NCBI GenBank assembly: GCA_977030845.1
Contig: OZ365112.1
Span: 21,142,001-21,206,000, forward strand
Length of the DNA stretch: 64,000 nucleotides
DNA from: Fimbriosthenelais zetlandica
Lineage: Eukaryota
Direction of reading: 5' to 3'
Shown here: positions 29,199 to 64,000 of the stretch, piece by piece
How positions within the stretch are numbered: the first letter of the stretch is position 1
Layout: each line of letters opens with the position of its first letter
Position numbers and translations under genes: made by a program
The notes under the pieces: generated by a model
Told to the model about the DNA's origin: nothing
Database searches by the model: none
The model's input: only the letters and a program-made list of their open reading frames with translations

Positions 29199-29763
29199 CC
29201 ATTTCATCAATGTGGTCTGACATGGAGAGAGTTATTCCAACGAGTAACAGACTCATAATGAGCATCAGGCTTGCCAGCACCATCACAATCCTTGCCACTC
29301 TCTTCTGACTGTCTGTCTTAATTTCCTTCGGTGGTATCTGATCAACTGTCCTGTAGGGATCATCTGGTGAGGGGACCAGGTAGGTATATCCCCTACCTCG
29401 GCGGGCATCATGTGTCGACGGTCGATGACTGTGAATAGAACTTTGTCGGGTGCTTGATCTTCGACCTGATCCTCCTGTTGCAGTACTTCCTCTCCTTCCT
29501 CCACCACTTCCTCCTTTTTGTCCTCTCTCTCCTGTCCCTGCTCCTCCTCCAATACTTGGTCTTGGTCTGTCAACACTTGAACCTTCAGGAGGTTTTCCAG
29601 GATGTACTCCTCCTGGAAGTGGAGCAACCAGTGCCAGTCCCTGTGCACCAAACCCTGAAGATGAGCGCCTCTCTGATCCCCCGATCGCACCTGTCGATGA
29701 CCCTGCTGCGACCCCAGCCACTGACAACACCTCAATCCGGTCATCGTGGGTAGAGGAGGTCAT
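29199..29763 (-). CDS. Coding exon of an uncharacterised single-pass membrane protein (disordered Gly/Ser/Arg-rich N-terminus, TM helix near the exon end); 3' exon(s) not identified
   Basis: 188-codon open frame with an in-frame stop upstream and no earlier ATG. Hydrophobic segment IVMVLASLMLIMSLLLVGITLSM is preceded by QKRVAR. The exon ends at a phase-1 donor ATG G|gttagt (29198). Confidence 0.8.
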
Positions 29764-39855: not shown

Positions 39856-42800
39856 TTAAACGACTGGGGCTATATGTGACGTATAATGTTCGGCTTAATG
39901 TAAAGCTAAACAACTTAAACAATTAAACCACTAGGCCTACATAAAATAAACGATTGGACTCCTAAATGACACGCCAGTTCCATTTGCATTTGTTGTAGGC
40001 CTACTTCTTTTTCCCTTGGATATTTGGGTCCTATAGATTCGACCCTGAATTGAGGTGGAACCTATTTCTATGAAATCAGTTGACATCGCAGTGACACTAT
40101 GAGGTGACACATCAAGTGACAATTCCATAAGTTGCTATTACCAAAGAGTATGAAAATGATGTCATCTATAAGCTCTTTGCTACCACCGCCGTCGATGTAG
40201 AGTTGATATTTCATTTTCTTGTAGTTACTTCTTTTAGCACGAGATGTCTTAAGATGTCGTATAGGTGCTTCATATTTATGTGACCAGAGGGCGTACAGAT
40301 AAGTGAAGCATACCATAAACTACTAGTCTTAAAATCACCATGGTTCTCTATAAAACTATTCTCAACACTGTTAGGTTTAGGTTTCAGTGAGTGGGAACTA
40401 ACTATAAAAGTTTATCGAAAGCCAATTTCTAACGAAAAAGGAATTCGTCAACTATCAAAGTTTTAGAAATTTACAAAAAACAATGGCAGACTCCCCCATG
40501 TACATCAAAAGGGCAACGAGGAGAGCAATAGGGTATTAAAAACAATGTTTATGATACATGTTCACGTAGGCTATTTGAACAGTGTATAAAAGCATACATT
40601 TATTATGCATTCTGACACCAATTCCTATTATCTAATATTACGTTGCTATCCAAATTTGGGCAAATGTATAGCATAGATGTAACACTCCCGGCGTTACACG
40701 TTAAGTATACTGATAGGTGACATCACTTGGTCCTATCAGTCGCCTCAAGATCGGTAAAATATAAGCTGTTTTTATCTTTTATCAGCGTGTACACTATTAT
40801 ATTACCATTATGTTTAAAGGTTACCCATACATTATGCATTGTGCTCTCGGCTTGCAGGCTTCAGCAATTACTAACAAGTTAACCAGAGGTCGGGGTATTA
40901 CCGATGTAATGTTACGGCCCGTTGAAAACCCAGGTTCAGGATATAAATCAAGAGCGGCGCTATAGCAAAAATTTATAGTAAAGGAGTCCCCCAAGGCTCT
41001 CCTCGCTATGACCCCATATAATTGAAATCGTGGATATTTCCGTCGGAATCTCTATGAAGTAATGACCAGAGCCATAATTTTGTGTGTGATAATAACTGCC
41101 GTTTGTGGTCTATATATCTTCCTTTGAAGAATAACATCAAAAGTAATCTTAATAAACGCAGGTACATTTTATGCCCTCCGAAATAAAGATTTTAATTGAA
41201 TTGAATGTTATAGTAGGCTATAGATGCTACTTGGGTATTGCTTTACATGATTACCAACAATGTTTGTGTTGAGGATGGATTTGGAGACACTTGTGAGTTA
41301 AAGCGCTCTATCCTTTGGTCTTCTGATCTCCTTTATCTCATTCACTTTTTTACCGCCTACCTATAGCTAGGTGATGTTCGCCCCACACATTTCCTTCCTC
41401 CCCTCCCCGCCTCCTCAAATATTTCAAACCAACTTGTAAACTTGTAGATGTGGTATAGATGTATATAAAAGATGTGAGCTACTGAAATATGAGCTTCTGA
41501 AATGATGGGGCTTTTTTGTCTTTTTAACCCGACAAGAATTGAAATAAAAGAACTTTTAATTACTCCTCAACAGAAGCAGGATATATACAGATTTTTGGTC
41601 TGGATTTTAAATTGGTGTCAAGTACGTCACAAAGTTGACTTTCAGTGCATAAACCAGTTCTTCTGGGCGCGTCAGTTGGAAAGATGTGTGGTGTGAAGGG
41701 CATACACTCGAGGTAGAAATGACAAGCCTTAGTGGCAAGGAGTGTCTATGTACGGGCGCCCAGACTGTTCAAACGGAAGAAAGACCCCACAAAAAGTGTC
41801 ATCTTTGCCACAGTAAAAAAACCTTTCGTCCATGCACATATATGTGTGGGTCTGGGCAAAATCCCATTGTGGAAAGTGTGTCTGTGTGGTTAATGTATGC
41901 GTGAATAAGTGGTCTTAGTATCACCATATTAATCTATGATATCGCCATTTCTCTCCTTACATGTATGATGACCAAAAGTTAAATGAACAGTTCTATACCA
42001 GACAACTTCAGATGCCATACAACTCTCCTCTATGGACATTGATGAAAATTGGTATTTTTAAATAAAACCAGCTTTAGAAATGGCGTTCTTTTCAGACACC
42101 TAAAAAGTCTTGAATTTGATGAATTACCTTGCCATTTTTATATTCACGATTGTGATTACTCTTAATGTCCCGCCAGATTTTGATAACACCTTAAAAACAT
42201 TCTAGACATGTAAGTTCTTTAGGTGAAAAGATTTCTTCGTGCAAATCCTTCATTACCAAGAATTAAATTTACTTTAACACATCTTCCCTTTTCTCCGTCA
42301 CTTTGTTGAATAAAGGAAATATTGAAGACAATTATTACATAGATATATATGGAAAAAAATTATTACATAGATATATATGAAAAAATGAGGTTTGACCTGT
42401 CAAAATCTAGACTTGATTTGACAGGTTTAAGAATTCGTCGGATTGGATACCCAAATCAACACAACTATATGAACATCCATTGGTCCTCGTTAAGGGATTT
42501 AATAATTATGTTAATCATTTAGTAGTTTCTACAAAATAACATCTTGTAATGATACCTTAGGTTCTAATTCTTTCTTCATGTTGGTGCCAAGCTGTGACGG
42601 ATAGGTCCCTACCGGTCTAGCAGCTTTCGAACATAGCCTGGTTATTCACCAAACCAGAACCAACCTGCCAAGGCGCAGTCAACCGCAGATAAAAACAACT
42701 CTTTATTAATGGCTGGCAAATTTTATTTTTCCCACTCGTCCCTTTTTTGAAAAAGTTCCTCTTTCGCGTGTCGAACACGATGGTAGGGAGCCCCACTACA

Positions 42801-46616: not shown

Positions 46617-46737
46617 ATGATGAGTGCGGGTGTAGACCCCGGTCGACCGCCGGGGCTTACATGGTCCGTAATCGTGTTCGTGGTTATAGCTATTTTAAAT
46701 TTGGATAGGATAAACTTTATATCAGCCCAACGATCAC
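46617..46737 (+). CDS. Collagen start exon encoding an N-terminal signal peptide or signal anchor
   Basis: In-frame TAG immediately before the ATG; [40 protein letters not shown] has a hydrophobic core and an I-S-A|Q cleavage-like site; phase-1 donor C|gtaagt. Confidence 0.75.
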
Positions 46738-49700
46738 GTAAGTACCATGATCATTTGGTTTCATTTATAACGAAGGTGTTAATCTTTGTGTATTGCCCTA
46801 CTACCAAATACCCAAGCTTATTGCTATTCATAGTTCCATGTTACATAATGTAATTGACATACCCGGTACCTTTATTTCGTTCACTTCGTTGACCTGATTC
46901 AATGTAAGTAAGATATTCTCTTTCGTTTAAATGACTAGATATGTTTTATTTGGCGCTATGACCATCTGATAGCGATCAATTCTTGCACGTTGATAATGCA
47001 TCTATTGCATGCAAAGCGCTATATCTGACACCTTTCGGAGGTTAGTATGTTATAACAGGATATCTACTGACCACTGTGTATATATGCTTACAGCTCAATG
47101 TTATGAGCTTCAGTCAGTCGCTTTCATGAGGTGGCCGCCTGCAGCCATAATATATTATATATTATATTATCTCGTAATATTATAATTCAGCTGCAAGCCT
47201 GTATGCAAGTCCATAATTATAACAGTGGATAGAATGTATCACCCATGCAAGAAAGGTGTCCTCAAATTGCCCGTGCTTGTATAGTACTTTACTCGTATCC
47301 ATGAACTCTTCACCCTGTGCACCTTGAAGCAATCACCTATACTACAAGCATCCAGCATGCGCCAGTCATAAAGTGTTGAATGTACAGAAATTTAAGATTC
47401 CATCAAGATGAATAATGATTTGCTGTCCTCATCAAGCAGACTACTTGGCGCGCATATGAAGATACTCTTGGCATCGTCTGATTTTTCTTAACCTACCTCT
47501 CCTACGCGTAGTAACTTTATGGTAGTATTTTAGTTTGTCCAGGCATGAAGCTCGATATCCTACTATATATCGAAAAAACTTTACAGAACAGGAGATCAAT
47601 CCACTCGATTTGTTTAGTGAGCGCGCTGCCAGTCAAGTGTGGTATTGATGGTCACTATGCGATATAAGATTTTAAAGCGCGTTAGCTTAAAAACTACTGG
47701 AACTTCAAGTCGGATCAATCAATGCATGAGCTATAGTGGACAACAAATTCTACAAAAAGTGCCATCCAACTGTGAACCATGACCCTAGACCTTCCTTGCA
47801 TTCCTTGACCTAGAAATATCCTTATTTCTAACTTCTGAAGACATTCCTATCTCTGATTTCCCTGAGGGATTCCCATCTGAAACTTTCCCTATGGATATTG
47901 CGCCTGTGCGCGGTGAGGTCCAGCGCCCATTGCAAGTCGCTTGCGGCATGTGGCAAGCTTGCTACTCATGTTCTCTATTCTTATTCCGAAATGGCAGACT
48001 GCTACTATGATCTGAGCTTTGTCATCGATATTGACAAAACCAATGAAGACTGGAGATTGGCTTGGGACACCATGGTCAAGTACATGACCTTCCTGGTAGA
48101 AGATCCCCGTCTGGAGTTTGGTTACAGGACATCGCCAAAAGATCAAGTGGCTATAGTGTCAGGTCTGAGCCCGACCACCTCAGATGTGCAGCTCTATCTG
48201 AATCAAGGTTTCGACCGCACCTTTGTTCTGAACACACTGGAGAACTACTTGGAGTATGGTACAAGTCTACCAGAAGGGATTATGACCCTATACACTAATC
48301 GAAACGGAGGCCCGGTATACTCAATCCGATATGGTGACCGCCCCCAAATGACAGACATAGTCTTCCTGTTGACCAATCGGCGTCGTCTGCCAGGAAACCT
48401 TAAGCAGTATACTGATGAACTTATTAGAAAGAACATGACGGTAATTGGAGTGGCAGTTGGTGAAGCGCCAAATGTGGACGTAGGCATGCTGCAATCAGTC
48501 GTATCTAACAGAAGACTTGTGGTGCAGCTTCCAACTTCCTCAGCAAATTTATATCAACAAAGAGACTTAACTTTTGACTCCATTCTTACTAGAAATTATT
48601 GCCCTCCTCCTACAATAGCTCCACCAATAGGTATTAAGTCATATAATATATAGAATGGTTTTAGGATCATATGTGTGATTATAGTGATGTTGTATCAAAA
48701 TGTTATGCAAAAAATGTGCCCTTCACAATAGGTTCTTGAATAACATCTTGTTTTAACGATCAATTTTGGGGCACTTTTATTAAAAAAGTAATTGATAAGT
48801 GAATTATTTGTTTAATCATACTTTCGAATGATTGACATATTTCTAATTAGATTGTACTACATAGCATCTTTATTTTTTAGCGGGTCCGCCCGGACCCCCT
48901 GGACCCCCAGGGAGGCCCGGTAATTCGGGACGTGATGGTCTACCTGGAACACTTGGAAGCACAGGTCCTACAGGACCTCCAGGAGGACCCGGAGGAAGAG
49001 GACCGGATGGACCCTCAGGTAAATTATTTGCTGGTTCAAAAACTATAAAATATTGTGAATCAAAACCACATTATAACGTAATATGAACCTGCTTCATCAT
49101 AATTCTTTTACAATATTCAAATTGTTAATGAGTTGTAATTGAAGAAGTATAGTTATACTTATAGAGTAACAATTTTCAGGAAATTAAACCGTTATGAGAT
49201 ATTCTATACATGTGCTGGATTTTAAAGGTTCACGTGGCCCCACTGGAAGTAGAGGAGGATCAGGACCTCTTGGACCAACTGGACCATCAGGACCACTAGG
49301 AACACGTGGGCCATCTGGCGGTCCAGGATCTACTGGAGTACTTGGCCCACTCGGACCAAGAGGACCTCCCGGACAACCTGGTCGTCCAGGTGGTCCAGGT
49401 GGTCCAGGATCCCCTGGATCCAGGGGATCTCGAGGACCTCCTGGGGGAAGAGGTGGAACTGGAATAACTGGCGAAGTAGGTCCACCCGGATCTGATGGAT
49501 CTCAGGGACAACGTGGACCCCAAGGACCTCAGGGTCCTCTAGGTCCTAGTGGTACAGGTGGACGACCAGGACCTCCAGGAAGGCAAGGATCAAGGGGTCC
49601 AAGAGGCCCTGGAGGACCAACAGGTAGAAATAATACTTATATTCTTCTATTTTTGATACCTATAGTGCATAATAACTATAATTATAACGAGGGGAAATTC

Positions 49701-52700
49701 CAATCGTCATTTGTCATCTAGGTACCGGCTATCTTCACAAGCCGTTTCTGATATTTTGAATTTAAACATATATAATTATAATATATAATCTTATTACATC
49801 GACATTATTTAGACCGTTGACATTTCTAGGTGGTTAAGGATACAGATTAATTTCATTACATCGACATTATTGCAAACCTTTGAAATTATTTCCAGGTGGG
49901 TTAGGAGAAGTAGGACCCCCTGGACAATCAGGAAGACCTGGGCCATCAGGTCCTGTTGGCGTAACTGGTGTTAGAGGAGGAACAGGAGCCGTTGGTGATG
50001 CTGGACCACAGGGTCCACGAGGATCTTCCGGTGAATCTGGTCCTGCTGGTGAAATAGGCCCACCTGGTCCATCTGGCCCACTTGGCCCATCAGGTCCTAG
50101 GGGACCAGCAGGAGACTCCGGACCTTTGGGACCAGGAGGACCCCAAGGATCTCGAGGATCACCTGGACCATCAGGCCCAACAGGAGTATCTGGACCAACA
50201 GGAGCCTCAGGTTTACCAGGATTTCGTGGCCGACCTGGAGAAAGAGGCCCTGGTGGACCAAGCGGTCTATCTGGACCTACTGGTGTCAGTGGACCAGCTG
50301 GGGAACGTGGCCGACCTGGACCACCAGGCCCACGAGGATCACAGCCTGGCCCTGCTGGACCTGCTGGTACCCCTGGAGGCAGGGGCCCTGCTGGAGGACG
50401 AGGTCCTCCAGGCCCTACTGGTGTAGCTGGAGGGCCAGGTAACGCTGGACCACCAGGCAGATCTGGACCCTCAGGTGAATCTGGAGAAAGAGGTCCACCA
50501 GGACCAACAGGAGCAATCGGATCCAATGGTAAGTATTGATCTGGAAATGTAGAAAATAATGAATTACCTACTGTTCTGTCTACATAATTCATAATTTCCT
50601 ACCATACAATTATGATTTTAGGTGTGGAACGATTTTTTTAATTGAAAGTAATCTTTGAACTATTTGTGTTTGATTCAGGTCCATCTGGTCCATCTGGTCC
50701 ACCTGGAGGAACAGGAGTACTTGGTCCCGCTGGACCAACAGGACCACGTGGCCCAGCTGGACCAGCTGGGTCCCAAGGTGAGAGCGGTGCAGCAGGTCCA
50801 GTTGGCCCCCTAGGTTCCGCAGGACCATCTGGTGAACGTGGGGAAAGGGGCCCATCTGGACCAACAGGTGCAGCTGGAGGGCCAGGATCCAGAGGTCCAA
50901 GAGGGCCTTCAGGTCCATCAGGTCCAGCAGGAGGATCAGGTGGGTTACCCGTATATTTTCACTTCTATTGATAATTTTTTCCCAATCTCATTCATTTTGT
51001 TTTACAAACTTAAATGATATCTGGAAACATATCAACACACATGCTTTATTTATTGATATCATGCACTATGAAACTGATGATTTCATAACTAATGATTTAA
51101 TTTTAATGCCTTCTGTTAATTGCAGGAGAGATTGGCCCTGATGGTCCAGCTGGTCCACAGGGCTCAAGAGGATCCCGAGGACCTGCCGGACCACCAGGTG
51201 GTTCAGGCGTCCCAGGCGCAGGCGGCCCTAGTGGTCCACGAGGTCCAGCTGGTCCCTCAGGTAATATTCTTCACTACTTTGTCTATCTTCATTTAATAAA
51301 ATGGCAATTCTCTATCATAAGTTTAGTGTCGAAGCATGTGAATAAGTTTGGCAGTATTGCTGATTTATTCTATGTGTTGGCTCTACATTATATAAAAATC
51401 GTGGATAACTGATTTCTCTAGTTCTTGATTATCAATATTTGTAGGTGAGGCTGGCCCAAGTGGTGCGCAAGGATCTGCAGGTCCATCGGGCCCAGCAGGA
51501 CCATCAGGTGAAGCTGGACTACCAGGCCCTGTTGGTGCTGTTGGAGTAACAGGAGTAAGAGGACAACCAGGAAACCGCGGGCCTCGTGGCCCTGCTGGAC
51601 CTTCTGGCGAAGGAGGCGAAGCCGGGTCACCTGGTTCGCCAGGACCTACTGGTCCCAGTGGACCTTCAGGTGAATAAACATTTCCTCTAGAACAACTAAG
51701 TAAACAATGTCCATTTTCTTCCCAGACCCCTGTCTCTGCTACTTGCTGCCATGAGGATCTGGTTTATTATTTCATATTCATAATTGCTTTCATAATTTTT
51801 ATTTTCGCAAATTTCATTAAAAACAAACTGATTATCTCTACCAATAGGAGAGCGGGGCCCAAGAGGACCAACTGGTGCCGGTGGCCCCACTGGAGCTTCA
51901 GGACAGCAAGGATCAAGGGGATCAAGAGGTCCTGCTGGACCTTCTGGGCCAACTGGCTCAGCTGGTGAAGTTGGAGGTGTTGGACCAGCTGGACCTTCTG
52001 GGCCTAGAGGGGAGAGAGGAGGATCAGGCCCTGCTGGACCAACCGGTGCTCAAGGATCAAGGGGGCCAAGGGGACCATCCGGACCTTCAGGACCAGCTGG
52101 AGAGGCTGGTGAATCAGGCCCAGGTGGATCCCCAGGCCCAAGAGGTCCACGTGGACCCAGTGGACCTACTGGCGCAGGAGGTCCAACAGGTGCAGTAGGA
52201 TCTGATGGCCCAGCAGGACCATTGGGACCTGGTGGGGAACGTGGAGAGAGAGGACCAGGGGGACCCACTGGAGCAGCAGGAGGGCCAGGTTGTAACATTT
52301 TCCCTACTCTACTATAATTGTATTTGGCGACTATTTATTTTTGTAAGATAATCGTAAGGCATTCAATTTAATCTCCATCAAGAAATGATTTGATATTGCT
52401 GGTACAAGGCTCTGATATCTGGAATGGCATCCATTCATTTGAAAAGGCCTACACATGGCCGTGTGTATTGGAACTAATTGAAAAGTATTTTGGCAGGACC
52501 AAGAGGACCTGCAGGCCCTAGAGGAGAGAGGGGGGGAGATGGACCTCCAGGATCTTCTGGACCAGCTGGACCATTGGGACCATCTGGCCCAAGGGGACCA
52601 GCTGGGGAAGGTGGTGAAGATGGGCCACCAGGACCTTCAGGAAGACGAGGAGAGAGGGTAAAACATTTAAAATTTACTGAACCTCACATTTTAATACTAC

Positions 52701-55700
52701 AAATTTTCTGGACCATCTGTAATCTCACTCCTCACTGTTACATTTCGTGTTGGTTATTTGTTATTTCTTAGGGACCTCGTGGACCAGCTGGTGAAGCTGG
52801 AGAACCTGGGGAAGGTGGGTCTCTTGGACCTGCTGGACCCTCAGGACCTCGAGGAGAATCGGGCGAGAGAGGACCATCTGGACCTACTGGAGCAGGCGGA
52901 CCTCTTGGGCCTGCAGGACCTCAAGGACAACGTGGACCACGGGGAGAACGTGGCCCCACAGGAGTGGGTGGACCAACAGGTACTTGAGCTGTTCCAATAT
53001 CTACTTACAGAACATGGTGAAATACCAGATTGTCTAAAGTTGTCACAACTTTCCTAATATTTGTTCCTTTATTACGTTCATCAAATTATATTTATCTGGA
53101 TCTTATATCGAGTATCTTTATGGTATATTATTTCCTTGGCATGATAGGCATATCATTAATCACATCACACTAAACAAATTTAGGAGCTGATGGTCGACCT
53201 GGTCCAAGAGGAACACGTGGACCTGCTGGAGAAGGTGGTCCACCTGGAGAAACTGGCGGTCTAGGTCCAGCAGGGCCAGGTGGACCTCGTGGTGAACGAG
53301 GACCAGCAGGTCCAACTGGAGTTGGAGGACCAACTGGTGCTGGAGGTCCTAGAGGAGAATCGGGACCAGCAGGACCCCGAGGTGAATCGGGAGAAGCTGG
53401 ACCTCCGGGAGAATCAGGTCTCCCCGGTCGTAGTGGTCCAGGTGGACCCAGAGGCCCAGCAGGACCTGGCGGCCCCACTGGAGCTGTTGGAGAAGCTGGT
53501 CCAAGAGGTCCCTCTGGACCCCGTGGAGAGCCTGGTAGGTTCTGTTCAGTATAATTAAAAAAATGTTCCCGTCTAACATTGGATCGATATTTCAAGAATT
53601 TCCACTGTTCTTGAATTACAAGAATATTTATAAAATACTTTCGTATTTCAGGACCAAGTGGTCCACCAGGTGAAACTGGATCAGCTGGACCAGGAGGGCC
53701 GCGTGGTCCCGCCGGACCAAGAGGATCATCTGGGCCTACTGGTGCTTCAGGGCAACCTGGACCAGCAGGCAGACTAGGAAATGCCGGAAGACAGGGTCCA
53801 AGTGGTCCATCAGGCCCACCAGGTCCTTCTGGGGCAGCAGGCGAGACTGGATCTGGAGGTTCTCCTGGTCGTCAAGGTAAGCTTTTTTAATAGAATACAT
53901 CTAGCTATTTTGGACATTAAGGAAATTATATACTAATGGGGGTTTAAAGAGAAAATGAAAATAATTTGATATCAAGTTGATTGTTTATAATATTTTAATA
54001 ATTCAGGACCGCGTGGACCTTCTGGGGAGGCAGGAGAATCTGGACCAGCTGGCCCAGCAGGACCGACTGGCCCAAGTGGACCAAGTGGGGAACGAGGTGT
54101 TCGTGGTCCTACTGGAGTCACTGGTGTTGGAGGGCGAACTGGTGCTGCTGGCTTCCGAGGACAACCCGGAGCAAGAGGTCCCTCTGGCCCACCAGGTGAC
54201 ACAGGATCTGGGGGCCCAGTTGGCCCAGCTGGGCCAAGCGGACCATCAGGAGAAAGAGGACAAGCTGGTGAGCGAGGTTCAACAGGTACTGTTGGAAGGA
54301 CTGGAGCTGCTGGTCCCTCTGGTCCAAGAGGACCAGCTGGGGAGTCAGGAGAGCAAGGTTCTCCAGGACCTGCAGGCCGTGCTGGCCCTGATGGGAGGCC
54401 TGGACCCTCTGGCCCTCGTGGTGAAGGTGGAGAAAGAGGACCTGGTGGTCCCACAGGAGGATTAGGACCTAGAGGTTCCAGAGGTCCAGCAGGCCCACCT
54501 GGTGAGGCAGGTGAAACTGGTGTTGCAGGACCATCTGGACCCTCAGGACCTTCAGGACAACAAGGTGAGAGAGGAGAGAGAGGACCTGGTGGTCCAACTG
54601 GAGGTTTGGGTCCCGCAGGACCAAGAGGACCAGCTGGCCCAAGAGGAGAAAGAGGAGAAAATGGGGAAGCAGGATCAGTCGGTCGTGACGGTCCACCAGG
54701 ACGTTCAGGACCAAGAGGACCATCAGGTCCTACCGGATCAGGTGGCCCTACCGGTGTGGCTGGTTCTCGTGGTCCAAGAGGTCCATCTGGCCCAAGGGGG
54801 GGAAGAGGACCTGCAGGTCCGACTGGTGCTTCTGGTCCACTTGGACCTAGTGGCCCATCAGGACCAAGGGGAGAGGCAGGTGAGCCCGGAGAGGCTGGTG
54901 AACCTGGAGAACAAGGCCGAGCTGGACCTAGTGGAGAAAGAGGGGCCCGAGGGGAGGCTGGTCCTGGAGGCCCTACAGGAACTCCTGGCAGACCCGGACC
55001 ATCTGGACCAAGAGGACCACGTGGAGAAGGTGGAGAGAGAGGTACACCTGGTCCCACAGGTAAGTCTTTTTCTTAATTCACAAATTGTATCAAAGAAAGA
55101 GTAAAAGTTACTGATCAAGATCCCAGTAATAACATTGGTAAATTTGATTACTTCCCATCAGTGATACTGATATCACATGATTTTTCATGAATAAAGTTCT
55201 ATATTTATATTATTTACATGTTCTATGTAGGTTAGACACATTTTTTTCTATCTATTCAGGTGTTGCTGGTCCAATTGGATCGAGTGGACCAAGGGGACCA
55301 TCTGGACCACCAGGCCCAACAGGTGCAGCTGGTGAGTCTGGACCACGAGGCGGACCAGGATCCCAAGGCACACGTGGTCAACCAGGACCAGCTGGAGAAT
55401 CTGGAGGTGACGGTCCACCAGGCCCTGCAGGACCACGTGGAGCACGTGGTCAGGCTGGTGAAAGAGGACAACCTGGACCAACAGGTCAGATATTAATCTT
55501 ATAGCAGTATTAGCAACATAGAATTTATGAGTTTAAAAAAACGTCTGAATTTCGAGAACATGAAATATACACTCACATACTTTATTTTTTAGGGAGATAC
55601 ATGTAATAACTATCTGTTTCTTTAGGTGCTGCTGGTGGATTGGGCCCTGCTGGCCAAGCTGGACCACGTGGACCAGCCGGACCGACTGGAGAAGGTGGTG

Positions 55701-58700
55701 AACAGGGTGAGCCTGGACTTCCAGGAAGTGGTGGCCGTCCAGGCCCAGATGGCAGATCAGGACCTCGAGGTATGACTGATATATAATATAGTAGTAATAA
55801 TTTATTTCTTAATATAACGCATATATATATCCAGTACTTAGACCTGAGGGCATGTAACCTTGTTGATTGATAAGTCTGATTAGTTTGCTCTGTGGCATGT
55901 ATTGGAATAGATAACACCTGATGAATGTTGTTCAATATGAATTTTTCAGGTCCCTCAGGGCCATCTGGTGCCCCAGGTCCGACTGGAGCTGCAGGTGAAT
56001 CTGGTCCTCGTGGTCCTTCTGGTCCATCTGGACCACCAGGAGAACAAGGCGAAGGAGGACCTGCAGGATCTGTTGGAAGACCCGGTCCAAGGGGTCCATC
56101 TGGACCACCAGGGCCACAAGGAGAAGGTGGTTCAACTGGTGTTGTAGGAGAATCAGGTAGGTTTTCATTAAGACAAGTTTGCGATAATGATTGTGCAATA
56201 ATATGGGCATAATACATCCACAGTCTGGTCATAGACCTGCTCTGTGATATTCTTGTATAGTCTTGTAAGTTTATTACCTAAACTAGTGTCTTTAGTCCTG
56301 TAATTTTCTTTTGCAGGACCCCGTGGTCCAGCTGGACCTTCAGGTGAGAGAGGAGAGCGGGGCCCATCAGGTCCCACAGGTGCAGGAGGTCCACGAGGAT
56401 CATCTGGCCCATCAGGTCCACGTGGTGAGCGTGGTGGACCAGGGACTACAGGGAGTGCAGGTCCCCTTGGTCGGCCAGGTCCCTCAGGTGAAAGAGGAGA
56501 ACGGGGAGAGGCTGGAGAAACTGGTACACCTGGTAGAACCGGGGCTGCTGGTCCTAGTGGCAGACAAGGAGAACGTGGTGCCCGTGGTCCAGCTGGACCA
56601 TCAGGAGAAACAGGTGCTGCTGGAGAGGCAGGTACATCTGGCCGGCCAGGACCCAGAGGTGGACGGGGAGAGCGTGGCCCAGCTGGAGGCCCTGGAGCAA
56701 CAGGGCGTGTCGGTTAGTTGACGTTCTTGTAAATTTGCTTATAATTAGTTTAATACTGTTAAATCGGTTTTATTTAAATGTAGTATAGTATACATATAGG
56801 CAAAATTATACACATGTACATGTATTATGTCATGTCATTAAGAATGTTCATAGTTTTATGTTGAGATTACTTTGTAAGATACTCCTTTGTTCATTTCCAG
56901 GACCATCTGGTCCTAGTGGCCCTCAAGGTGAGCGTGGTGGACCAGGTCCTGCAGGACCTACTGGCAGTTCTGGCCCCAGAGGACCTCAAGGCAATGCAGG
57001 TACACGAGGATCACGAGGGCCTGCAGGACCGACTGGTGTAGCAGGAGAAATTGGACCAGGTGGCAGCCCAGGCAGACAAGGTCCAAGAGGTCCATCTGGA
57101 CAAGCAGGTGAAGGAGGTGAAGCTGGTCCTCCAGGTCCGTCCGGTGCGAGTGGACCACGTGGCCCGTCTGGTCCATCAGGACCTCGAGGAGAAAGAGGGG
57201 AAACCGGTTCTTTAGGATCACCGGGCCCATCTGGTCCTTCTGGACCGCGTGGAGAACGTGGTGAAAGAGGAGAAGGTGGTGAACCTGGAGTAGGTGGAAG
57301 GACTGGATCAGCAGGCCCTCGAGGGCCCTCAGGAGAGGGAGGTGAACGTGGTCCTCCTGGACCCACTGGATCCATTGGCGTTGCTGGACAATCTGGACAA
57401 CGTGGAACCCCAGGAACCAGAGGTCAGCGTGGTGAACGTGGACCACCTGGTCCTACTGGTTCTGTTGGGAATCTAGGACGGCCAGGACCAGGAGGTCCGC
57501 GTGGAGCAAGAGGCGAAGCTGGAGAAACTGGATCAGTAGGAGAAGGTGGCCCACAAGGAGGCAGAGGCCCACGAGGCCCATCTGGACCTCCTGGTGTATC
57601 TGGCCCTACTGGGGCAGCAGGGGAGGCAGGATCAAGAGGCCAGGCAGGCCGTGATGGTAAGTTGTTTGTTTAATATGTACATTATTACATAGATGTACAT
57701 AGATTTCCATTTTCTCAGACTTTCATTATCTTTCCATCAAACCCTCAATATGTAGGCAATTTCTTACATGTATTTATGGCTCCTCTTCTAAAAATTACCA
57801 TTCTCAGAATTGTTTTATACTTTCCATTTATTATTCCATTTCACTATTCTTCCATTTTTCTTATTCTCCATATGTATGTATCTCATTCCCTTTAATAATT
57901 TACAATCATGTATTATGATAATTTATAAAATAAAATTCATCGAAGGTTCCCGTGGCCCTGCTGGAGAAAGAGGAGAGCCTGGAGAACCTGGTTCGGCTGG
58001 ACCATCTGGCCCTTCTGGACCTCGCGGACCTTCTGGGGAAAGGGGCGAGAGGGGTCCTGGTGGACCCACAGGTTCTGTAGGACGTCCTGGGCCAACAGGA
58101 CCTTCTGGACCAAGTGGAGAAGCAGGTGGCAGAGGTGAAACTGGAGCTCCTGGCAATGCTGGTAGAGCAGGTAAATAGTCTGCACTTAATATTTTCGTTA
58201 GCGCTATTTTCTCTATTTTGATCTATAGTATTTCGTCTCTGTGTCTTATATCTTTTAGATTTCTCTACAGGTCGTTAAACTTGTAAACCAGACATTAGAA
58301 ACCATATAAATATATTGCAGGTCCTACTGGCCCCCGTGGACCAAGTGGAGAAGGTGGACCAAGAGGTCCAACTGGTGCTCCTGGTCCTGATGGGCCAGCC
58401 GGTCCCAGAGGTGGATCCCTTGGAAGAGGAGAAAGAGGAGAAAGAGGTCCTCCTGGTCCCACTGGAGGACTTGGACCAGCTGGTCCTCGCGGTCCATCTG
58501 GAGAACGTGGAGAAAGAGGTGAAGGTGGTGAACAAGGAGCACCAGGTCCACCGGGTCTTGGTGGGCCACGTGGGCCATCCGGACCTGCTGGTTCACCTGG
58601 GCCAACCGGTTCTATTGGTATTTCGGGAGCTGCGGGACCAAGAGGACAGAGGGGAAGTCAGGGTGAACGTGGACCTCCAGGTGAGAAACTTTGGATTTCT

Positions 58701-61700
58701 TTTACAACTTTTTTCATTTTGTAATTAGGTGTTTCTTCTGTTTTTGCTCATAGGAAATTTTGATTATATCAATATTTATTTTGACTATGTAAATGACCTC
58801 AAATTCATATCACAGGTGGTACTGGAACACTTGGGAGACAAGGAGAACAAGGTGCCCGCGGACCTTCAGGTCCATCTGGTGAGGGTGGAGAAGCTGGAGA
58901 AGCAGGTTCTCCAGGCCCTCCAGGACGTGGTGGATCAGCTGGACCCCGAGGGCCTTCCGGACCACCAGGCCCTACAGGAAGCATTGGATCATCCGGTGCT
59001 GCTGGGCCAGGTGGACCAAGAGGTCAAAGAGGAGAGCCAGGTGAGAGAGGGAGTCCAGGCACACCAGGTAATTCTGGATCAACTGGTGTTCTAGGTAACG
59101 CAGGTCCAAGGGGCGCCCCAGGCCCAAGGGGGCCAAGGGGACCTTCTGGATCTCCAGGGCCTACTGGGTCACTGGGCTCTGCAGGCAACCGTGGTGAACA
59201 AGGAGAACGCGGAGAAAGGGGACCAGGAGGACCCACAGGTGGTGCAGGATCAGCAGGACCAAGAGGTCCCCAAGGAGCAAGTGGAGAGCGTGGTCCACCT
59301 GGACCCACAGGATCCGCTGGACCCGATGGAAGGTCAGGACCAAGTGGACCTCGTGGACCAGCAGGACCACAGGGTGAAGCAGGCGAAGCAGGTGAAGGTG
59401 GTCCAGCTGGCAGAGCAGGATCACCTGGAGCAAGAGGGCCAAGAGGCCCAGGAGGAGAGCGAGGACCCCCAGGATCTACTGGCACTGGAGGACAGCCTGG
59501 GGAAGTTGGATCTCCTGGTGGTCAGGGTGCACGAGGTGAACGTGGACAACGTGGAGAACCAGGCACCCAAGGTAAGCTATTTTCTTCAGTAACAATGTGG
59601 CATAATGTGTAAGGATATTCACATACTCAAAAGGCAGTAGCTTATTCTTTTGCAGTAGGCTACATTTAGTATTTTACTGAGTATTTTTGCAAACGTGTAA
59701 TACACACATATTGTACATGTACATGGTGGTTTATTCTTGTAGGCTCGCCAGGACAACCTGGTCCAGCAGGACCAAGTGGTGAGAGAGGTCGGCCAGGTGC
59801 TGGTGGAGAACGTGGACCACCAGGGGGCACAGGTACACTTGGAAGTCCAGGAGCAGCTGGACCACGGGGACCTCGAGGTCCTTCAGGACCTACTGGAGTT
59901 GCGGGTCAACCAGGTGACAGTGGAGCAGCTGGGCCAAGTGGTCCATCAGGACCGGGTGGACCTAGAGGAGAGGCTGGTGAAGCTGGGGAGAGTGGTGAGC
60001 CAGGGCCAGCAGGATCACGGGGACGTGCTGGTTGGTATACCTGCTTATAACTCGAAAAAATATGCTTATTTATTCATGTCGTTTAGAAGACATTGAAAAA
60101 ATACCATGTTAAATTACATTTACAGGTTCTCCTGGACCAAGTGGACCACGTGGACAACCAGGGCCTAGTGGCGCTATTGGAAGAGCTGGTGAAGCTGTAA
60201 GTTTCCTCCGCATTGAATCCCATTTTAGTGGCAATTTTTTATTTTCATAATCTCTTGGGTCACTGGCGTAAAATCTGGAATAAATATATATAGGATCCAA
60301 CCTTATATTTCTGCATTTTTATGTAGGGAGCTCGTGGCCCAGCAGGAGAACGTGGACAGGGTGGAACGCCTGGTGAAAGAGGAGAACCAGGGCAACCTGG
60401 TGAGGCTGGCCGAGCTGGTCCATCTGGACCTCAAGGTGAACGAGGGCCAAGAGGAGAGGCTGGAGCCGGTGGTGAAGCCGGATCTCAAGGTTCTCCAGGT
60501 AAGCATATTTCCACTTTATCGTAACAAGCTTCAAGGGCCATTTATAATACCTTCACTAAAAATGAAATTACATTTTAGTATTTTAGTAGATACTTTTAAA
60601 GAACATTTTAAGACAATGTAAAGTATTCAAGATGATGCTCATCTAAAGAATTAGATTTGAAATAATTCTAACTGTTCTCAACACTTGTCGTCAAATGCAA
60701 AAATCTGGGCAGAAAAATTAATCATCATATTCATAAATTCTTTTGTGTACAGATTGGCAGAAGTCTAATTTTAAAGGGATAATATCAATGGTGGAAAAGT
60801 AAATAGAAATGAATTTTTATGAAATCGCTAAAATGCCTAAATATTTCTCTTTCCCTCAACATAATATAATATAATAATATAATATATGTATATTATTGGC
60901 TTCTTTGGCATTTAATTGATTAGACAGTAACGTGTTTGGAGGGATATTACTGAAAATATGACTTACTTCCCAGTTTTTTATTATCATGTACCTCTGAGAA
61001 TTTATATAGATCCCATGTCGTTACACACAACCTGTATGCATGGTCGTTACACGTAATGCAAGGCCTTAGAGCAACTCTCCTATACATAATGGAGCTCTTA
61101 TGGATGTGGACATCTGGCTACCCATTTATGAACTCATATTTATAATTCTTTTACCTAACCCCTTTCTTCCTTTATATAGGTATGGGTCTACCGTTTTAAA
61201 GCATAAAATTAAAGTCACATCACTGGGAAAAATGCATATGTTATCTCATTCCCTTCAATCAGAAATGGTCTGAGCTCTTATTCTATTCACTAGTGCTATC
61301 CGCTAGGGTACAAGTAACGACGCATTACGAGTAATGAAATGCTGTCTATTTCTTCCATGGTACACAAATAGGACTTGGAAGAAGGGGGACTAAGCGGATC
61401 TTTATATGGTTGACCTAGCAATTATTTTTCAATATTAAATATCAGCTCGGCATACATCATACAAGTTTGTTAAACATTATAAATATCAGCTCTCTATTAT
61501 TATTATTTGATATCGCTATTATTTAATATCGCTACACATGACCAGTGTAGAATAATGCATTACGTGTAACTACGGTAAATTACCCAAAAATATTTAATGG
61601 AATAGCTCCCCATGTCCAAAAGCAGGCTTTGATCTTCTTTGCATTTTAAGATATTTCAAGGTCCTGCTATTCGAATAAAATGTGTATTAAATAGTTTCAT

Positions 61701-64000
61701 ATAATGATATTTTTTAGATGAGATAATATATTTTCAAACCTTCTATTTATGCAGGCCCGGCTGGTTCAAGAGGAAGTAGGGGTGAAAGGGGTCCTTCAGG
61801 CCCAACAGGGTCAGCCGGTCTCCCAGGTCCCCGTGGATCGGATGGAAGATCAGGGCCAACTGGGCCTGCTGGACCAAGAGGTGAACAAGGTGAACGGGGG
61901 CCTGGCGGAGAAGCTGGTCGTCCAGGTTCACCGGGAAGAAGAGGATCTCCAGGTATAGTAGAAGTTTCTTCTGTTCTGTGCCAATATATTGATATGAAAG
62001 CATCTTGACTCACACATCAAACGTTTTCACTTATGATAATTATTAGGCCTACATGAAAACTTATTTTTTAGGACCAAGAGGACCGCCACAAGAACCAGCA
62101 GAAAATATCCCTGGCCCACCAGGTCCAACTGGTGCTATTGGTAGTCCAGGGACTCAGGGAGACCGTGGACCACCTGGGGAATCAGGAGAACCCGGTGAAG
62201 CTGGTCGTGCAGGTAGTCCAGGTGGTGCTGGACCACGAGGCCCACAGGGAGAACGTGGACCCCAGGGAGAGCGTGGAGGTGCCGGCCCATCTGGTTCAGC
62301 TGGACCAAGAGGTCCATCCGGACCATCTGGACCTGCAGGTGAGGCTGGTGAACCAGGCGAACAAGGCCCTGCTGGCCCTGCTGGATCACGTGGTTTGCCT
62401 GGAGAACGCGGCCAGTCAGGTGAGGCAGGAACGCCTGGTGAGAGAGGTGAGCCTGGTCCACAAGGTAGTCCAGGACGTGCTGGACCTCTTGGACCTGCCG
62501 GTCCATCTGGCGAGGCAGGTGCACGTGGCGAAGCTGGTGAAAGAGGCAGAGATGGCCAGCCTGGTCGTGATGGTGAACCTGGACGTGATGGATCTGCAGG
62601 ACTTCCTGGACCCAGGGGCAGACCCGGGTCACAAGGTGAACAAGGTGAACAAGGCGAACGTGGTGAGGTTGGTGCTCCTGGCTCTGCTGGTTCAGATGGG
62701 CGACGGGGAGGTGGTGGTGAACGAGGACAACCTGGTCCACCAGGACCTACTGGTGCTGCTGGAGAACCTGGTTCAAGAGGCCCAGCAGGTCCGACAGGAG
62801 AAAGGGGGGAAAGAGGACAAGCTGGAGAAGGTGGTCAAAGAGGTGAGCCAGGAAGTGCTGGAAGGGCTGGATCACCTGGCCAAAGAGGAGAACGTGGTCC
62901 AGGAGGATCCGCAGGAGCCCCTGGCCCCGATGGTGAAGCTGGTTCCCAAGGAGAGCCTGGACCAAATGGTGCAGCTGGCCCACAAGGAGAAAGGGGACAA
63001 CGTGGAGAAGCTGGATCACCAGGTATGACATACATTAATTCTGTCAAGCATGGAAATATCACATTATAAATATCTTTGTCGTTCTGAAATCATCTTGATA
63101 GAGACTTAGTTAAATGACACATGGCTTTGTTTTGTAGGAAATGCTGGACGCGATGGAACCCCAGGTCTTCCTGGAGAGGCCGGAAGGTCAGGTCCATCTG
63201 GACCCGCTGGATCAGCTGGAGAAAGAGGACAACCTGGTGAAGCTGGACCTCGCGGAGAACAGGGAACTAGAGGTTCACAGGGACCACAGGGAGCTGGTGG
63301 AGAAAGAGGACGTGCTGGTGCTTCAGGTGCACCGGGTCTTCCAGGTGAACGTGGACGTGACGGTGAGGGTGGTGCCAGAGGTCCTGCTGGACCATCAGGA
63401 CCAGCTGGAGCTGATGGAGAAGCTGGTCAACCTGGACCAGCTGGACCACAGGGAGAGCGCGGTCAACCAGGAGAACGAGGTCAACCTGGAGAAGCAGGAC
63501 AGGCAGGAGAAGCAGGAGAGCCTGGACGTCCTGGTCCCGCAGGCAGAGCAGGTCCACAAGGGTCATCTGGCCCCCAAGGTGAAGCAGGAGCTCGTGGGGA
63601 GCAAGGACAAAGAGGAAGTGATGGCAGACCTGGTAGTGCTGGCCGTCCTGGTAAACAAAGTTTCATATTGATATCCAAATTGTATAAAAAATATAATATA
63701 TATGAATTAAAATATAACATGAAGTAAATGAATATCACAATTATAAGCCTGGAATTTTACAGCAGGAAGAGGTCATTGTCTAGACAGGGCCTGCAATGGA
63801 TGTCCATATATTAGCAGTGATGGTATTTACCTTTTTACAGGCGAGAGAGGACCACGTGGACCTTCAGGTCCTGGAGGGCCCCAAGGTCCAACTGGTGCAG
63901 CTGGGCCATCCGGCCAGCGTGGAGAAGCTGGTGAACGCGGCCAGCCAGGTCAATCTGGTGCTCTTGGAGAACAGGGCCCTCGTGGACCAGATGGACCAGC
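46617..64000 (+). CDS. Giant vWA-domain collagen, 3' partial: signal peptide - vWA - about 1,070 Gly-X-Y triplets
   Basis: Hand-spliced coding exons: 46617-46737, 47841-47912, 47998-48630, 48881-49018, 49228-49623, 49896-50528, 50679-50939, 51126-51260, 51445-51669, 51848-52288, 52497-52657, 52772-52979, 53184-53534, 53652-53876, 54007-55059, 55260-55484, 55626-55769, 55950-56156, 56317-56712, 56901-57656, 57946-58170, 58321-58680, 58816-59571, 59743-60030, 60126-60196, 60327-60498, 61755-61952, 62072-63022, 63138-63650, 63841-end. All are GT-AG, phase-compatible and stop-free. Extra small exons between 46738 and 47840 cannot be excluded. Confidence 0.92.
47998..48630 (+). CDS. von Willebrand factor A domain exon of the collagen (divergent)
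   Basis: 633-nt phase 1-1 exon: [12 protein letters not shown] (beta-A), [14 protein letters not shown] (compare the usual IVLTD), MTVIGVAVG, ending NYCPPP. Flanking Cys residues are typical of vWA modules. Confidence 0.85.
48881..62088 (+). CDS. Collagen triple-helical domain 1, about 893 Gly-X-Y triplets
   Basis: Continuous Gly-X-Y across 24 exons plus the start of a 25th; only imperfections are GSQP (50336-50347) and GGSLGR (58410-58427). Confidence 0.9.
60861..60886. repeat. (ATAAT)n microsatellite in the longest intron of the helix-coding region
   Basis: ataatataatataataatataatata read directly. Confidence 0.6.
62113..64000 (+). CDS. Collagen triple-helical domain 2, more than 175 triplets, runs off the window
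   Basis: Gly-X-Y resumes after the QEPAENIP linker and continues without interruption to position 64000. Confidence 0.9.

What the first reader, a model, noticed from the sequence alone, without database searches (positions are those of the whole stretch)
46617..64000. Giant collagen: one vWA domain followed by more than 3,200 residues of almost uninterrupted triple helix
Seen: hand-summed exon lengths give about 893 triplets (about 2,680 aa) with two one-triplet defects, an 8-aa linker, then more than 175 further triplets, with no end in the window. Known: fibrillar collagen helices are about 1,014 aa. vWA-bearing collagens have a short (VI, XXVIII, XXI) or repeatedly interrupted (VII, XXII) helix. 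At about 0.29 nm per residue, domain 1 alone would be about 0.77 micrometre. Comparable lengths are known mainly from annelid and vent-tubeworm cuticle collagens. Inference: this architecture fits no collagen type I recognise and may be a new class of ultra-long structural fibre.
Basis: partly seen in the sequence, partly recalled or inferred. Interest (0 to 1): 0.9.

Follow-up and report, generated by a model that had tools for sequence, protein, structure and literature searches.

The report
Giant annelid-type collagen gene, membrane-anchored
The window holds the first third of a real gene for a collagen about 2.5 micrometres long, of the kind known from worm cuticles, and relatives show that it ends in a membrane anchor with a strongly conserved tail inside the cell.

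Summary
Twenty-nine AG/GT exons on the + strand (46617-64000) give an open 3,467-aa reading frame. It has a signal-like N-terminus, one vWA domain (fold confirmed) and 3,215 aa of Gly-X-Y with three small interruptions. The helix lacks Lys, Cys, His, Met, Trp and Tyr.

The window shows about 37% of the gene. An orthologue in another assembly has the same exon lengths for 24 consecutive exons and the same interruptions. It continues to 8,985 aa, with an 8,651-aa helix of 2,879 triplets, about 2.47 um long.

The orthologue then ends in a short linker, one transmembrane helix and a roughly 70-aa cytoplasmic tail. An intron-less contig from a third species joins helix to anchor directly. The tail core is invariant in three species.

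This is not a new class of fibre. It matches the annelid giant cuticle collagen, measured at up to 2.4 um. Annelid collagens of 7,719-8,859 aa were reported in 2025 (PMC12403961). I found no description of the head-helix-anchor architecture.

This scan already saw the same anchor and tail in a paralogue elsewhere in this genome (s1-214038). Cuticle location, the taxon and the window gene's own 3' end were not tested. No RNA runs could be listed.

The parts
46617..46737 (+). Exon 1. Start codon, the conserved n-region [13 protein letters not shown], a 16-residue hydrophobic core and ..FISAQRS. Probably a cleaved signal peptide. Ends in a phase-1 donor, GTAAGT.
   Evidence: Conserved upstream of the vWA exon in L002 (71% identity, E 3e-17) and in the orthologue (E 5e-6). 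Cleavage is inferred, not tested.
47998..48630 (+). Exon 2. One vWA domain with flanking Cys residues (HCYYD... and ...RNYCPPP). The MIDAS motif is non-canonical: DIDKT in place of DxSxS, and TN in place of TD.
   Evidence: Pfam VWA E 6e-4, below cut-off. HMMER hits. AF2 model and Foldseek against PDB. Atlas. Alignment A1.
48881..49018 (+). Exon 3. The helix starts here ([11 protein letters not shown]...).
   Evidence: The orthologous exon is 144 nt.
49228..49623 (+). Exon 4, collagen, 396 nt.
   Evidence: AG/GT, phase 1. Same length in the orthologue.
49896..50528 (+). Exon 5, collagen, 633 nt. Holds the one-residue insertion (Pro, 50345-50347) after 50 triplets.
   Evidence: The same insertion sits at the same place in L001 and in the orthologue.
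50679..50939 (+). Exon 6, collagen, 261 nt.
51126..51260 (+). Exon 7, collagen, 135 nt.
51445..51669 (+). Exon 8, collagen, 225 nt.
51848..52288 (+). Exon 9, collagen, 441 nt. Weak donor, GTTGTA.
   Evidence: The alternative donor at 52291 would create a stop. Same length in the orthologue.
52497..52657 (+). Exon 10, collagen, 161 nt. Ends in one of two phase-0 introns.
52772..52979 (+). Exon 11, collagen, 208 nt.
53184..53534 (+). Exon 12, collagen, 351 nt.
53652..53876 (+). Exon 13, collagen, 225 nt.
54007..55059 (+). Exon 14, collagen, 1,053 nt. The largest exon.
55260..55484 (+). Exon 15, collagen, 225 nt.
55626..55769 (+). Exon 16, collagen, 144 nt.
55950..56156 (+). Exon 17, collagen, 207 nt.
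56317..56712 (+). Exon 18, collagen, 396 nt.
56901..57656 (+). Exon 19, collagen, 756 nt. The orthologue splits it into 180 + 576 nt with an extra intron.
57946..58170 (+). Exon 20, collagen, 225 nt.
58321..58680 (+). Exon 21, collagen, 360 nt. Holds the Gly-to-Leu triplet LGR (58419-58427) after 11 triplets.
   Evidence: The orthologue has AGR at the same place.
58816..59571 (+). Exon 22, collagen, 756 nt.
59743..60030 (+). Exon 23, collagen, 288 nt.
60126..60196 (+). Exon 24, collagen, 71 nt. Ends in the second phase-0 intron.
60327..60498 (+). Exon 25, collagen, 172 nt.
61755..61952 (+). Exon 26, collagen, 198 nt.
62072..63022 (+). Exon 27, collagen, 951 nt. Holds the 8-aa break QEPAENIP (62089-62112).
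   Evidence: The orthologous exon is also 951 nt, and its break at this place is only 'NA'.
63138..63650 (+). Exon 28, collagen, 513 nt.
63841..64000 (+). Exon 29, collagen. Cut by the window end after 160 nt. The orthologous exon is 909 nt.

Best explanation
This is the 5' 37% of the gene for one chain of an annelid-type giant cuticle collagen.

Shown in the sequence:
- An N-terminal hydrophobic leader.
- One disulfide-clasped vWA head.
- A nearly perfect Gly-X-Y helix with no lysine.

Shown in orthologues:
- The helix runs for about 8,650 residues, or about 2.5 um.
- It has five small conserved breaks.
- Its composition changes from N to C. Pro in X falls from 51% to 9%. Pro in Y rises from 12% to 32%. 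Ser/Thr in Y falls from 29% to 2%.
- It ends in a roughly 30-aa linker, one transmembrane helix followed by RRVR or KRMR, and a cytoplasmic tail of about 70 aa whose core is invariant.

Inferred mechanism:
1. The leader is cleaved, which makes the chain a type I membrane protein.
2. Three chains held side by side in the ER membrane are brought into register next to the bilayer.
3. The helix zips from C to N, starting in the Pro-in-Y-rich C-terminal end.
4. X-position Pro and Y-position Ser/Thr in the N-terminal third are the likely sites of the X-position hydroxyproline and sugar-bearing threonine reported for annelid cuticle collagens.
5. The rod is delivered to the apical surface or microvilli of epidermal cells. 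There it either stays tethered or is cut in the linker, where a Lys followed by a second basic residue is conserved.
6. The rods pack into the parallel fibre layers of the cuticle.
7. With no Lys in the helix, lysyl-oxidase cross-links are impossible. The vWA head is the likely site of end-on or lateral contacts.
For: Gene model: open frame, AG/GT at every junction, 26 of 28 introns in phase 1.

Orthologue: identical exon lengths for 24 consecutive exons, and 64.5% identity with 26 gap positions. The interruptions sit at the same places.

Orthologue model: 8,985 aa with no stop. The helix is 8,651 aa, 2,879 triplets and about 2.47 um, with no K, C, H, M or W.

Transcript evidence: the intron-less contig L012 has one 1,485-aa ORF that runs helix, linker, TM, tail and 3'UTR. 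It aligns without a single gap to orthologue residues 7504-8968 at 60.7% identity. The genomic contig L014 matches L012 only from a canonical acceptor AG onward.

Tail: the core TTLND[ST]ESAFADSVYNKSS[IV]VDFDGPF is invariant in three species. In the third species the tail exon and the vWA exon lie on the same 502,448-nt contig.

vWA fold.

Leader: conserved in three species.

Literature:
- Molecules of up to 2.4 um were measured (PMC2443231 citing Gaill 1991).
- X-position 4Hyp is especially high in earthworm cuticle collagen (PMC8233474).
- Annelid collagen predictions of 7,719-8,859 aa exist, and one from Eisenia has 40% X-position Pro (PMC12403961). The window helix has 41.9% X-position Pro.
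- Adult annelid cuticles have layers of parallel collagen fibres crossed by microvilli (PMC10127387).
Against: There is no expression or protein evidence that this gene's product is in the cuticle.

The window gene's own 3' two-thirds and its C-terminus lie outside the window. They are inferred from orthologues.

I did not establish the taxon of this genome. The nearest named relatives of the vWA domain are molluscan, and 'annelid' comes from other agents' notes.

The orthologue model is my own splice prediction on a composite of two haplotigs. Only its last 1,465 aa are checked against a transcript, and that transcript comes from another species.

Whether L012 derives from RNA is inferred from its lack of introns.

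Signal-peptide cleavage, shedding, hydroxylation, glycosylation and C-to-N folding are all inferences.

The genome holds other giant vWA-collagens, so which of them builds the fibres is open.

HMMER against 1.84 billion representatives found no annotated annelid protein with this vWA head. I therefore could not show that the published giants are orthologues.
Confidence: 0.68

Rival explanations
1. It is a giant cell-surface tether rather than the cuticle fibre itself. On this reading it is a permanently membrane-bound collagen that links epidermal cells (microvilli or hemidesmosome-like junctions), or another cell type, to the matrix. The bulk cuticle fibres would be made by other genes.
For: The TM anchor and the very strongly conserved cytoplasmic tail suggest a continuing role at the cell. 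No conserved furin-type RxxR site lies in the linker. By language-model features the nearest look-alikes of the tail are C-terminal ends of apical type I surface proteins such as podocalyxin, collectrin, mucin-16 and PCDH15, but scores are at most 0.84, so this is only a lead. Several giant paralogues exist in the genome.
Against: The predicted rod length of 2.47 um matches the length measured for extracted cuticle collagen molecules. The X-position Pro bias matches cuticle collagen chemistry. In the literature I could reach, only the cuticle collagens of annelids are described as this long.
Confidence: 0.2
2. One reading: a new class of ultra-long structural collagen unrelated to anything described.
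For: No annotated protein shares the vWA head or the tail. The exon structure, with phase-1 introns that split the Gly codon, differs from that of fibrillar collagens.
Against: Length, head domain and composition match the annelid giant collagens already described biochemically. Gene predictions of the same size were reported in 2025.
Confidence: 0.07
3. Artefact: a mis-assembled repeat, a pseudogene, or several adjacent genes wrongly chained.
For: No RNA from this genome could be examined. Collagen repeats are prone to assembly error, a caveat also raised in PMC12403961.
Against: There are no N bases in the window and no stop in 10.4 kb of joined exons. Exon lengths and interruptions match those in independently assembled genomes of two other species. 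A gap-free transcript match covers the 3' end of the orthologue.
Confidence: 0.03

Closest known systems
Annelid giant cuticle collagens (Nereis, Lumbricus, Arenicola, Alvinella, Riftia), defined biochemically
   Same: A rod of micrometre length (up to 2.4 um measured, 2.47 um predicted here for the orthologue). A globular domain. Imino acid concentrated in the X position, with Ser/Thr/Ala in Y. Not a banded fibril-former.
   Different: In the literature I could search, these proteins were known only as molecules and peptide fragments. Here there is a gene with a defined vWA head, five conserved helix breaks, an N-to-C composition gradient and a C-terminal membrane anchor. Identity with the cuticle protein is inferred, not shown.
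Predicted giant annelid collagens in PMC12403961 (Alvinella pompejana 8,859 aa; Paralvinella 7,719-8,689 aa; one in Eisenia andrei)
   Same: Same size class (orthologue model 8,985 aa). The same Pro bias as the Eisenia protein (X-Pro 40% and Y-Pro 21.5% there; 41.9% and 15.8% in the window part).
   Different: That paper reports length and proline positions only. It describes no domain architecture and no membrane anchor. I could not obtain those sequences to test orthology.
Transmembrane collagens XIII, XVII, XXIII and XXV (and nematode cuticle collagens with an N-terminal anchor)
   Same: A collagen helix tethered to the membrane by a single pass. The chains may register next to the membrane, and the ectodomain may be shed.
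   Different: Those are type II proteins: N-terminal anchor, cytoplasmic N-terminus, short interrupted helices of a few hundred residues (from established knowledge). This protein has an N-terminal leader and a C-terminal anchor (type I). Its helix is 8,650 residues and almost unbroken.
vWA-bearing collagens VI, VII, XII, XIV, XXI, XXII and XXVIII
   Same: A vWA head. The best structural match is collagen VI alpha3 N5.
   Different: One vWA domain only. I saw no FN3, Kunitz or TSPN domain. The helix is 10 to 25 times longer.
Fibrillar collagens (types I-III, V, XI, XXIV, XXVII)
   Same: A long, nearly uninterrupted helix. Exon lengths are multiples of 9 nt.
   Different: No COLFI C-propeptide in the orthologue or in the transcript contig. 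Introns split the Gly codon (phase 1) instead of lying between triplets. No Lys for cross-links. No D-period-like periodicity.

Membership tests
Annelid giant cuticle collagen | Triple helix about 1.5-2.5 um long | tested here: met
   The window alone gives at least 3,215 aa, about 0.92 um. The exon-for-exon orthologue gives 8,651 aa, about 2.47 um. For the window gene itself the full length is inferred.
Annelid giant cuticle collagen | Globular domain at an end of the rod | tested here: met
   One vWA domain at the N-terminus.
Annelid giant cuticle collagen | Imino acid mainly in the X position (hydroxylated there), with Ser/Thr/Ala in Y | tested here: inconclusive
   The sequence has X=Pro 41.9% and Y = R, A, P, S, T. 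This holds for the N-terminal third only, and the bias reverses toward the C-terminus in the orthologue. Hydroxylation cannot be read from DNA.
Annelid giant cuticle collagen | Made by the epidermis and located in the cuticle | not testable with these tools
   No sequencing runs were listed. There are no expression or proteomic data.
Annelid giant cuticle collagen | The organism is an annelid | not tested
   Other agents' notes call this genome annelid. My only taxon signal is that the nearest named vWA relatives are molluscan, that is lophotrochozoan.
Fibrillar collagens | C-terminal COLFI propeptide | tested here: not met
   In the orthologue and in the transcript contig L012 the helix runs straight into linker, TM and tail.
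Fibrillar collagens | Exons begin with an intact Gly codon (phase-0 introns, 54-nt-based exons) | tested here: not met
   26 of 28 introns in the window and 63 of 68 in the orthologue are phase 1 and split the Gly codon.
Transmembrane collagens (XIII/XVII/XXIII/XXV type) | Type II orientation: N-terminal cytoplasmic domain and signal anchor | tested here: not met
   The TM helix with a basic stop-transfer motif lies at the C-terminus, after the helix. The N-terminus has a short 16-residue hydrophobic core typical of a leader.
vWA/FACIT-type collagens (VI, VII, XII, XIV, XXI, XXII, XXVIII) | Short or repeatedly interrupted helix, with further modules (FN3, TSPN, Kunitz, several vWA) | tested here: not met
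   Five breaks in 8,651 aa. I saw no domain other than the single vWA head in the models. Pfam was run only on the vWA exon and on the tail.
vWA domain (PF00092) | Rossmann-like alpha/beta fold, and the Pfam gathering score | tested here: inconclusive
   The fold test is met (Foldseek E 2.9e-9 to 4igi, TM 0.67-0.71). The orthologue's exon has a precomputed PF00092 hit. The window sequence itself scores 20.5 bits, below the 23.8-bit cut-off. The MIDAS motif is non-canonical.

The most novel reading that the evidence does not exclude
The micrometre-long worm cuticle collagen is made as a type I transmembrane protein, an orientation not described for any collagen. Its invariant cytoplasmic tail lets the epidermal cell, for example through its microvilli, hold, position or orient each 2.5-um rod while the crossed fibre layers of the cuticle are laid down. 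The N-to-C switch from X-position to Y-position proline would give the rod a built-in polarity of stability and glycosylation.
Probability: 0.45. Interest if true: 0.75.

Novelty: new member of a known kind. Interest (0 to 1): 0.58.

Why it matters
Annelid cuticle collagens have been textbook oddities since the 1960s-90s as the longest collagen molecules known. One paper even doubted the measured lengths because the only sequences then available were about 1,000 aa long (PMC2443231).

A gene model whose predicted rod length (2.47 um) equals the measured one would settle that doubt. It also gives the molecule a defined head, defined breaks and a defined end.

The C-terminal membrane anchor and its invariant tail turn an old question into testable experiments on a named motif. 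The question is how a cell folds an 8,650-residue triple helix in register and lays such rods into ordered crossed layers.

A helix with no lysine is also of interest as a natural collagen that cannot be cross-linked by lysyl oxidase.

Tried and rejected
1. RNA check on this genome. The look-up of sequencing runs listed no run for a 9.7-kb query or for a 1.6-kb query, so read laying was never used.
2. Finding annotated relatives through the vWA head. HMMER against 1.84 billion representatives gave only three unnamed ORF fragments and three mollusc multi-vWA proteins.
3. Finding annotated proteins with the tail. Among proteins of 66-210 aa there were only two unnamed ORFs. Among proteins of 817-2,600 aa there were none. 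The tool's length window excludes giants above 2,600 aa.
4. A search with the last 586 aa of the transcript ORF returned only generic collagens at 31-44% identity, nearly all covering only the helix part of the query. It was uninformative for taxon or orthology.
5. The tail has no Pfam family. Its Atlas look-alikes score at most 0.84 and are leads only.
6. I looked for a D-period-like long-range periodicity of charge, hydrophobic residues, Pro or Ser/Thr along the 8,651-aa helix. Only one peak stood clear of the triplet-shuffle null (maximum null z 7.7-8.6): Arg at a 3.4-residue period (z 16), which is too close to the triplet repeat to be long-range. No long-range period exceeded the null.
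7. Taxon from other genes in the window. I saw only a short exon resembling the start of a translational GTPase, which is not enough.
9. Old J Cell Biol papers on earthworm cuticle are held without body text. Composition figures for lysine could not be checked, so I make no claim about them.

Full report
**The observation**

A six-frame scan for runs of five or more Gly-X-Y triplets finds long runs only on the + strand, from 48883 to the last base of the window. The short runs on the minus strand are mirror images of these. The runs sit in all three frames and are separated by AT-rich gaps of 100-1,300 nt.

Almost every run is preceded by AG, with the G of that AG being the first base of a Gly codon. 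Almost every run ends in G|GTAAG-like donors. So the introns lie after the first base of a Gly codon, which is phase 1.

Joining the runs by that rule, together with a start exon (46617-46737) and a 633-nt globular exon (47998-48630), gives 29 exons. The joined sequence is 10,403 nt, has no stop codon and encodes 3,467 aa. Of the 28 introns, 26 are phase 1 and two are phase 0.

The helix starts at residue 253 and has 1,067 triplets with three breaks:
- one extra Pro (50345-50347);
- one triplet with Leu in place of Gly, LGR (58419-58427);
- the 8-aa stretch QEPAENIP (62089-62112).

The helix contains no Lys, Cys, His, Met, Trp or Tyr. Pro occupies 41.9% of X positions. The Y position is mostly Arg, Ala, Pro, Ser and Thr.

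**The head**

Pfam gives only a sub-threshold VWA hit (E 6e-4, 20.5 bits against a 23.8-bit cut-off). Three independent results make the assignment safe:
- HMMER against 1.84 billion cluster representatives finds three close unnamed ORFs and then mollusc multi-vWA 'collagen VI/XII-like' proteins.
- The 10 best Atlas look-alike clusters listed all carry Pfam VWA.
- An AlphaFold model built on eight sequences (pLDDT 75.8, pTM 0.81) matches solved vWA domains. These are collagen VI alpha3 N5 (E 2.9e-9, TM 0.67), mussel byssus PTMP1, VWF A3 and integrin I domains.

A Cys at each end of the domain is conserved, and the Cys-Pro at the C-terminal end is invariant in alignment A1. The metal-site motif is not canonical: DIDKT in the window and DVDTS in the orthologue instead of DxSxS, and TN instead of TD.

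The start exon is also conserved. Its n-region [11 protein letters not shown] and a hydrophobic core recur upstream of the vWA exon in two other species (71% identity with E 3e-17, and E 5e-6). I read it as a cleaved signal peptide. That is an inference.

**Is the exon chain real?**

No sequencing run of this genome could be listed, so I used comparison with other genomes.

The closest vWA ORFs led to genomic contigs of two other species. These are L001-L003 (59% identity in the head) and L004 (40% identity). Both show the same series of exon sizes in triplets (16, 45, 50+1+20/21, 30, 16, 25...), including the one-residue insertion.

I then walked along the second species' contigs with six more look-ups. 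I built a splice model by the same rules, working on a composite of two haplotigs joined inside a shared exon.

The window model and this model are 64.5% identical over 3,439 columns, with only 26 gap positions. Twenty-four consecutive exons have exactly the same length in nucleotides. In addition, one window exon of 756 nt is split into 180 + 576 nt in the other species. The three breaks fall at the same places. Intron sequences are not alignable. This pattern is what purifying selection on a single long reading frame produces, so I regard the chain as established.

**The rest of the gene**

The window ends 160 nt into an exon that is 909 nt long in the orthologue. The orthologue then continues for about 40 more collagen exons. 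My model of it has 69 exons, counted without the leader exon, and encodes 8,985 aa (807 kDa) without a stop.

The helix is 8,651 aa, or 2,879 triplets. It has only five breaks and no Lys, Cys, His, Met or Trp. At 0.286 nm per residue that is 2.47 um. The window therefore shows 37% of the helix.

Composition changes steadily along the rod:

| Position | N-terminal end | toward the C-terminus |
|---|---|---|
| Pro in X | 51% | 9% |
| Pro in Y | 12% | 32% |
| Ser/Thr in Y | 29% | 2% |

The 'Pro in X, Ser/Thr in Y' character seen in the window is therefore a property of the N-terminal third only.

**The C-terminus**

After the last short collagen exon, a phase-1 donor (G|GTGAGT) is followed 1.15 kb later by a phase-compatible acceptor. 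The exon that follows encodes, in order:
- a 29-aa linker;
- a 25-residue hydrophobic helix;
- RRVR;
- a 66-aa tail, then the stop codon.

This join is not only a prediction. A search with that exon found two ORFs.

One of them lies on L012, a 5,380-nt contig from another run of the first species. L012 has no introns and a single 1,485-aa ORF. About 1,360 aa of helix run straight into linker, TM helix, KRMR, tail, stop codon and about 920 nt of 3'UTR.

Genomic contigs of the same species match L012 at 99.5% identity. The match begins exactly at a canonical acceptor AG and not before it. L012 is therefore a spliced product.

L012's ORF aligns to residues 7504-8968 of my orthologue model over 1,465 residues without one gap, at 60.7% identity. 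This also validates the roughly 16 predicted junctions in that stretch.

The second ORF lies on the same 502,448-nt contig of a third species as that species' vWA exon.

The tail core TTLND[ST]ESAFADSVYNKSS[IV]VDFDGPF is invariant in all three species, although their vWA heads are only 40-59% identical to the window's. It matches no Pfam family.

**What it is**

The features are a micrometre-long and almost unbroken helix, a globular head, and imino acid concentrated in X with Ser/Thr/Ala in Y. These are the features reported for annelid cuticle collagens:
- Molecules up to 2.4 um (PMC2443231 citing Gaill et al. 1991).
- X-position 4-hydroxyproline 'especially high' in earthworm cuticle collagen (PMC8233474).

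The 2025 Alvinella genome paper lists predicted annelid collagens of 8,859, 8,689, 8,413 and 7,719 aa. It also lists one in the earthworm Eisenia andrei with 40% X-position Pro (PMC12403961). That paper gives length and proline statistics only.

In the library available to me I found no description of the vWA head, the conserved breaks, the gradient or the membrane anchor.

The same anchor and shared tail were noted earlier in this scan for a paralogue on another piece of this genome (s1-214038). Another giant vWA-collagen is noted 60 kb beyond this window (s1-214042).

**How it probably works**

Shown: the domain order (leader, vWA, helix, linker, TM, tail), the absence of Lys in the helix, the gradient, and the conserved breaks and tail.

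Inferred:
- The leader is cleaved, giving a type I membrane protein.
- Anchoring three chains in the ER membrane brings their C-terminal ends into register.
- The helix nucleates in the Pro-in-Y-rich C-terminal region and zips toward the N-terminus.
- The rod reaches the apical surface of epidermal cells. Their microvilli cross the cuticle, and adult annelid cuticles typically have layers of parallel collagen fibres (PMC10127387).
- It is then either kept tethered or released by a cut in the linker. The only conserved candidate site there is an invariant Lys followed by a second basic residue. No RxxR motif is conserved.
- Lysyl-oxidase cross-linking is excluded by the sequence, so the vWA head is the obvious candidate for contacts between rods.

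**Alternatives**

The main rival (about 0.2) is that this chain is a permanent surface tether rather than the bulk fibre. The invariant tail fits that reading at least as well.

An unrelated new class (about 0.07) and an artefact (about 0.03) are unlikely, for the reasons given above.

**Limits**

- I did not determine the taxon.
- I did not see the window gene's own 3' end.
- There is no expression or protein evidence.
- The orthologue model is a composite of two haplotigs.
- Only the 3' 16% of the orthologue model is checked against a transcript, and that transcript comes from another species.

Noticed in passing
L012:1-4460 (also the genes called in L004-L011): The gene calls on record for collagen DNA are mostly in the wrong frame or on the wrong strand. 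On the transcript contig L012 the recorded 'genes' are frame-0 acidic ORFs (DLDLMADQENED...), not the 1,485-aa collagen ORF in frame 2. On L011 the tail exon is not called, and an ORF on the opposite strand is. This may explain why these giant collagens are nearly invisible in ORF-based protein collections.
   Followed up: partly
L008 about 12,289 (orthologue, composite position about 38,372): One intron of the orthologue has a GC donor (G|GCAAGT) in the usual phase-1 position. All other junctions are GT-AG.
   Followed up: yes
window 56901-57656, compared with L005:17242-17421 plus 17837-18421: Intron gain or loss between species. The window's 756-nt exon is split into 180 + 576 nt in the orthologue by an extra phase-1 intron.
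   Followed up: yes
window 308-586, minus strand: An open stretch encodes an acidic, Ser-rich segment and ends in ...KKKRHVNIVFIGHV. From memory this resembles the start of the GTPase domain of eRF3/HBS1-type translational GTPases. It is probably an exon of a neighbouring gene.
   Followed up: no
window 29194-29763, minus strand: A 189-aa ATG ORF with a Gly/Ser/Arg-rich N-terminal part and a hydrophobic segment (IVMVLASLMLIMSLLLVGITL) near its end. It may be the first exon of a type II membrane protein.
   Followed up: no
window 38001-40000: G+C drops to 27% here, against about 40% around it. I did not examine this stretch.
   Followed up: no
orthologue model, helix residues 212-8862 (composite of L004-L011): There is a smooth N-to-C composition gradient along one helix. 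X-Pro falls from 51% to 9%, Y-Pro rises from 12% to 32%, and Y-Ser/Thr falls from 29% to 2%. The last tenth partly reverts. There is no long-range periodicity above the shuffle controls.
   Followed up: partly
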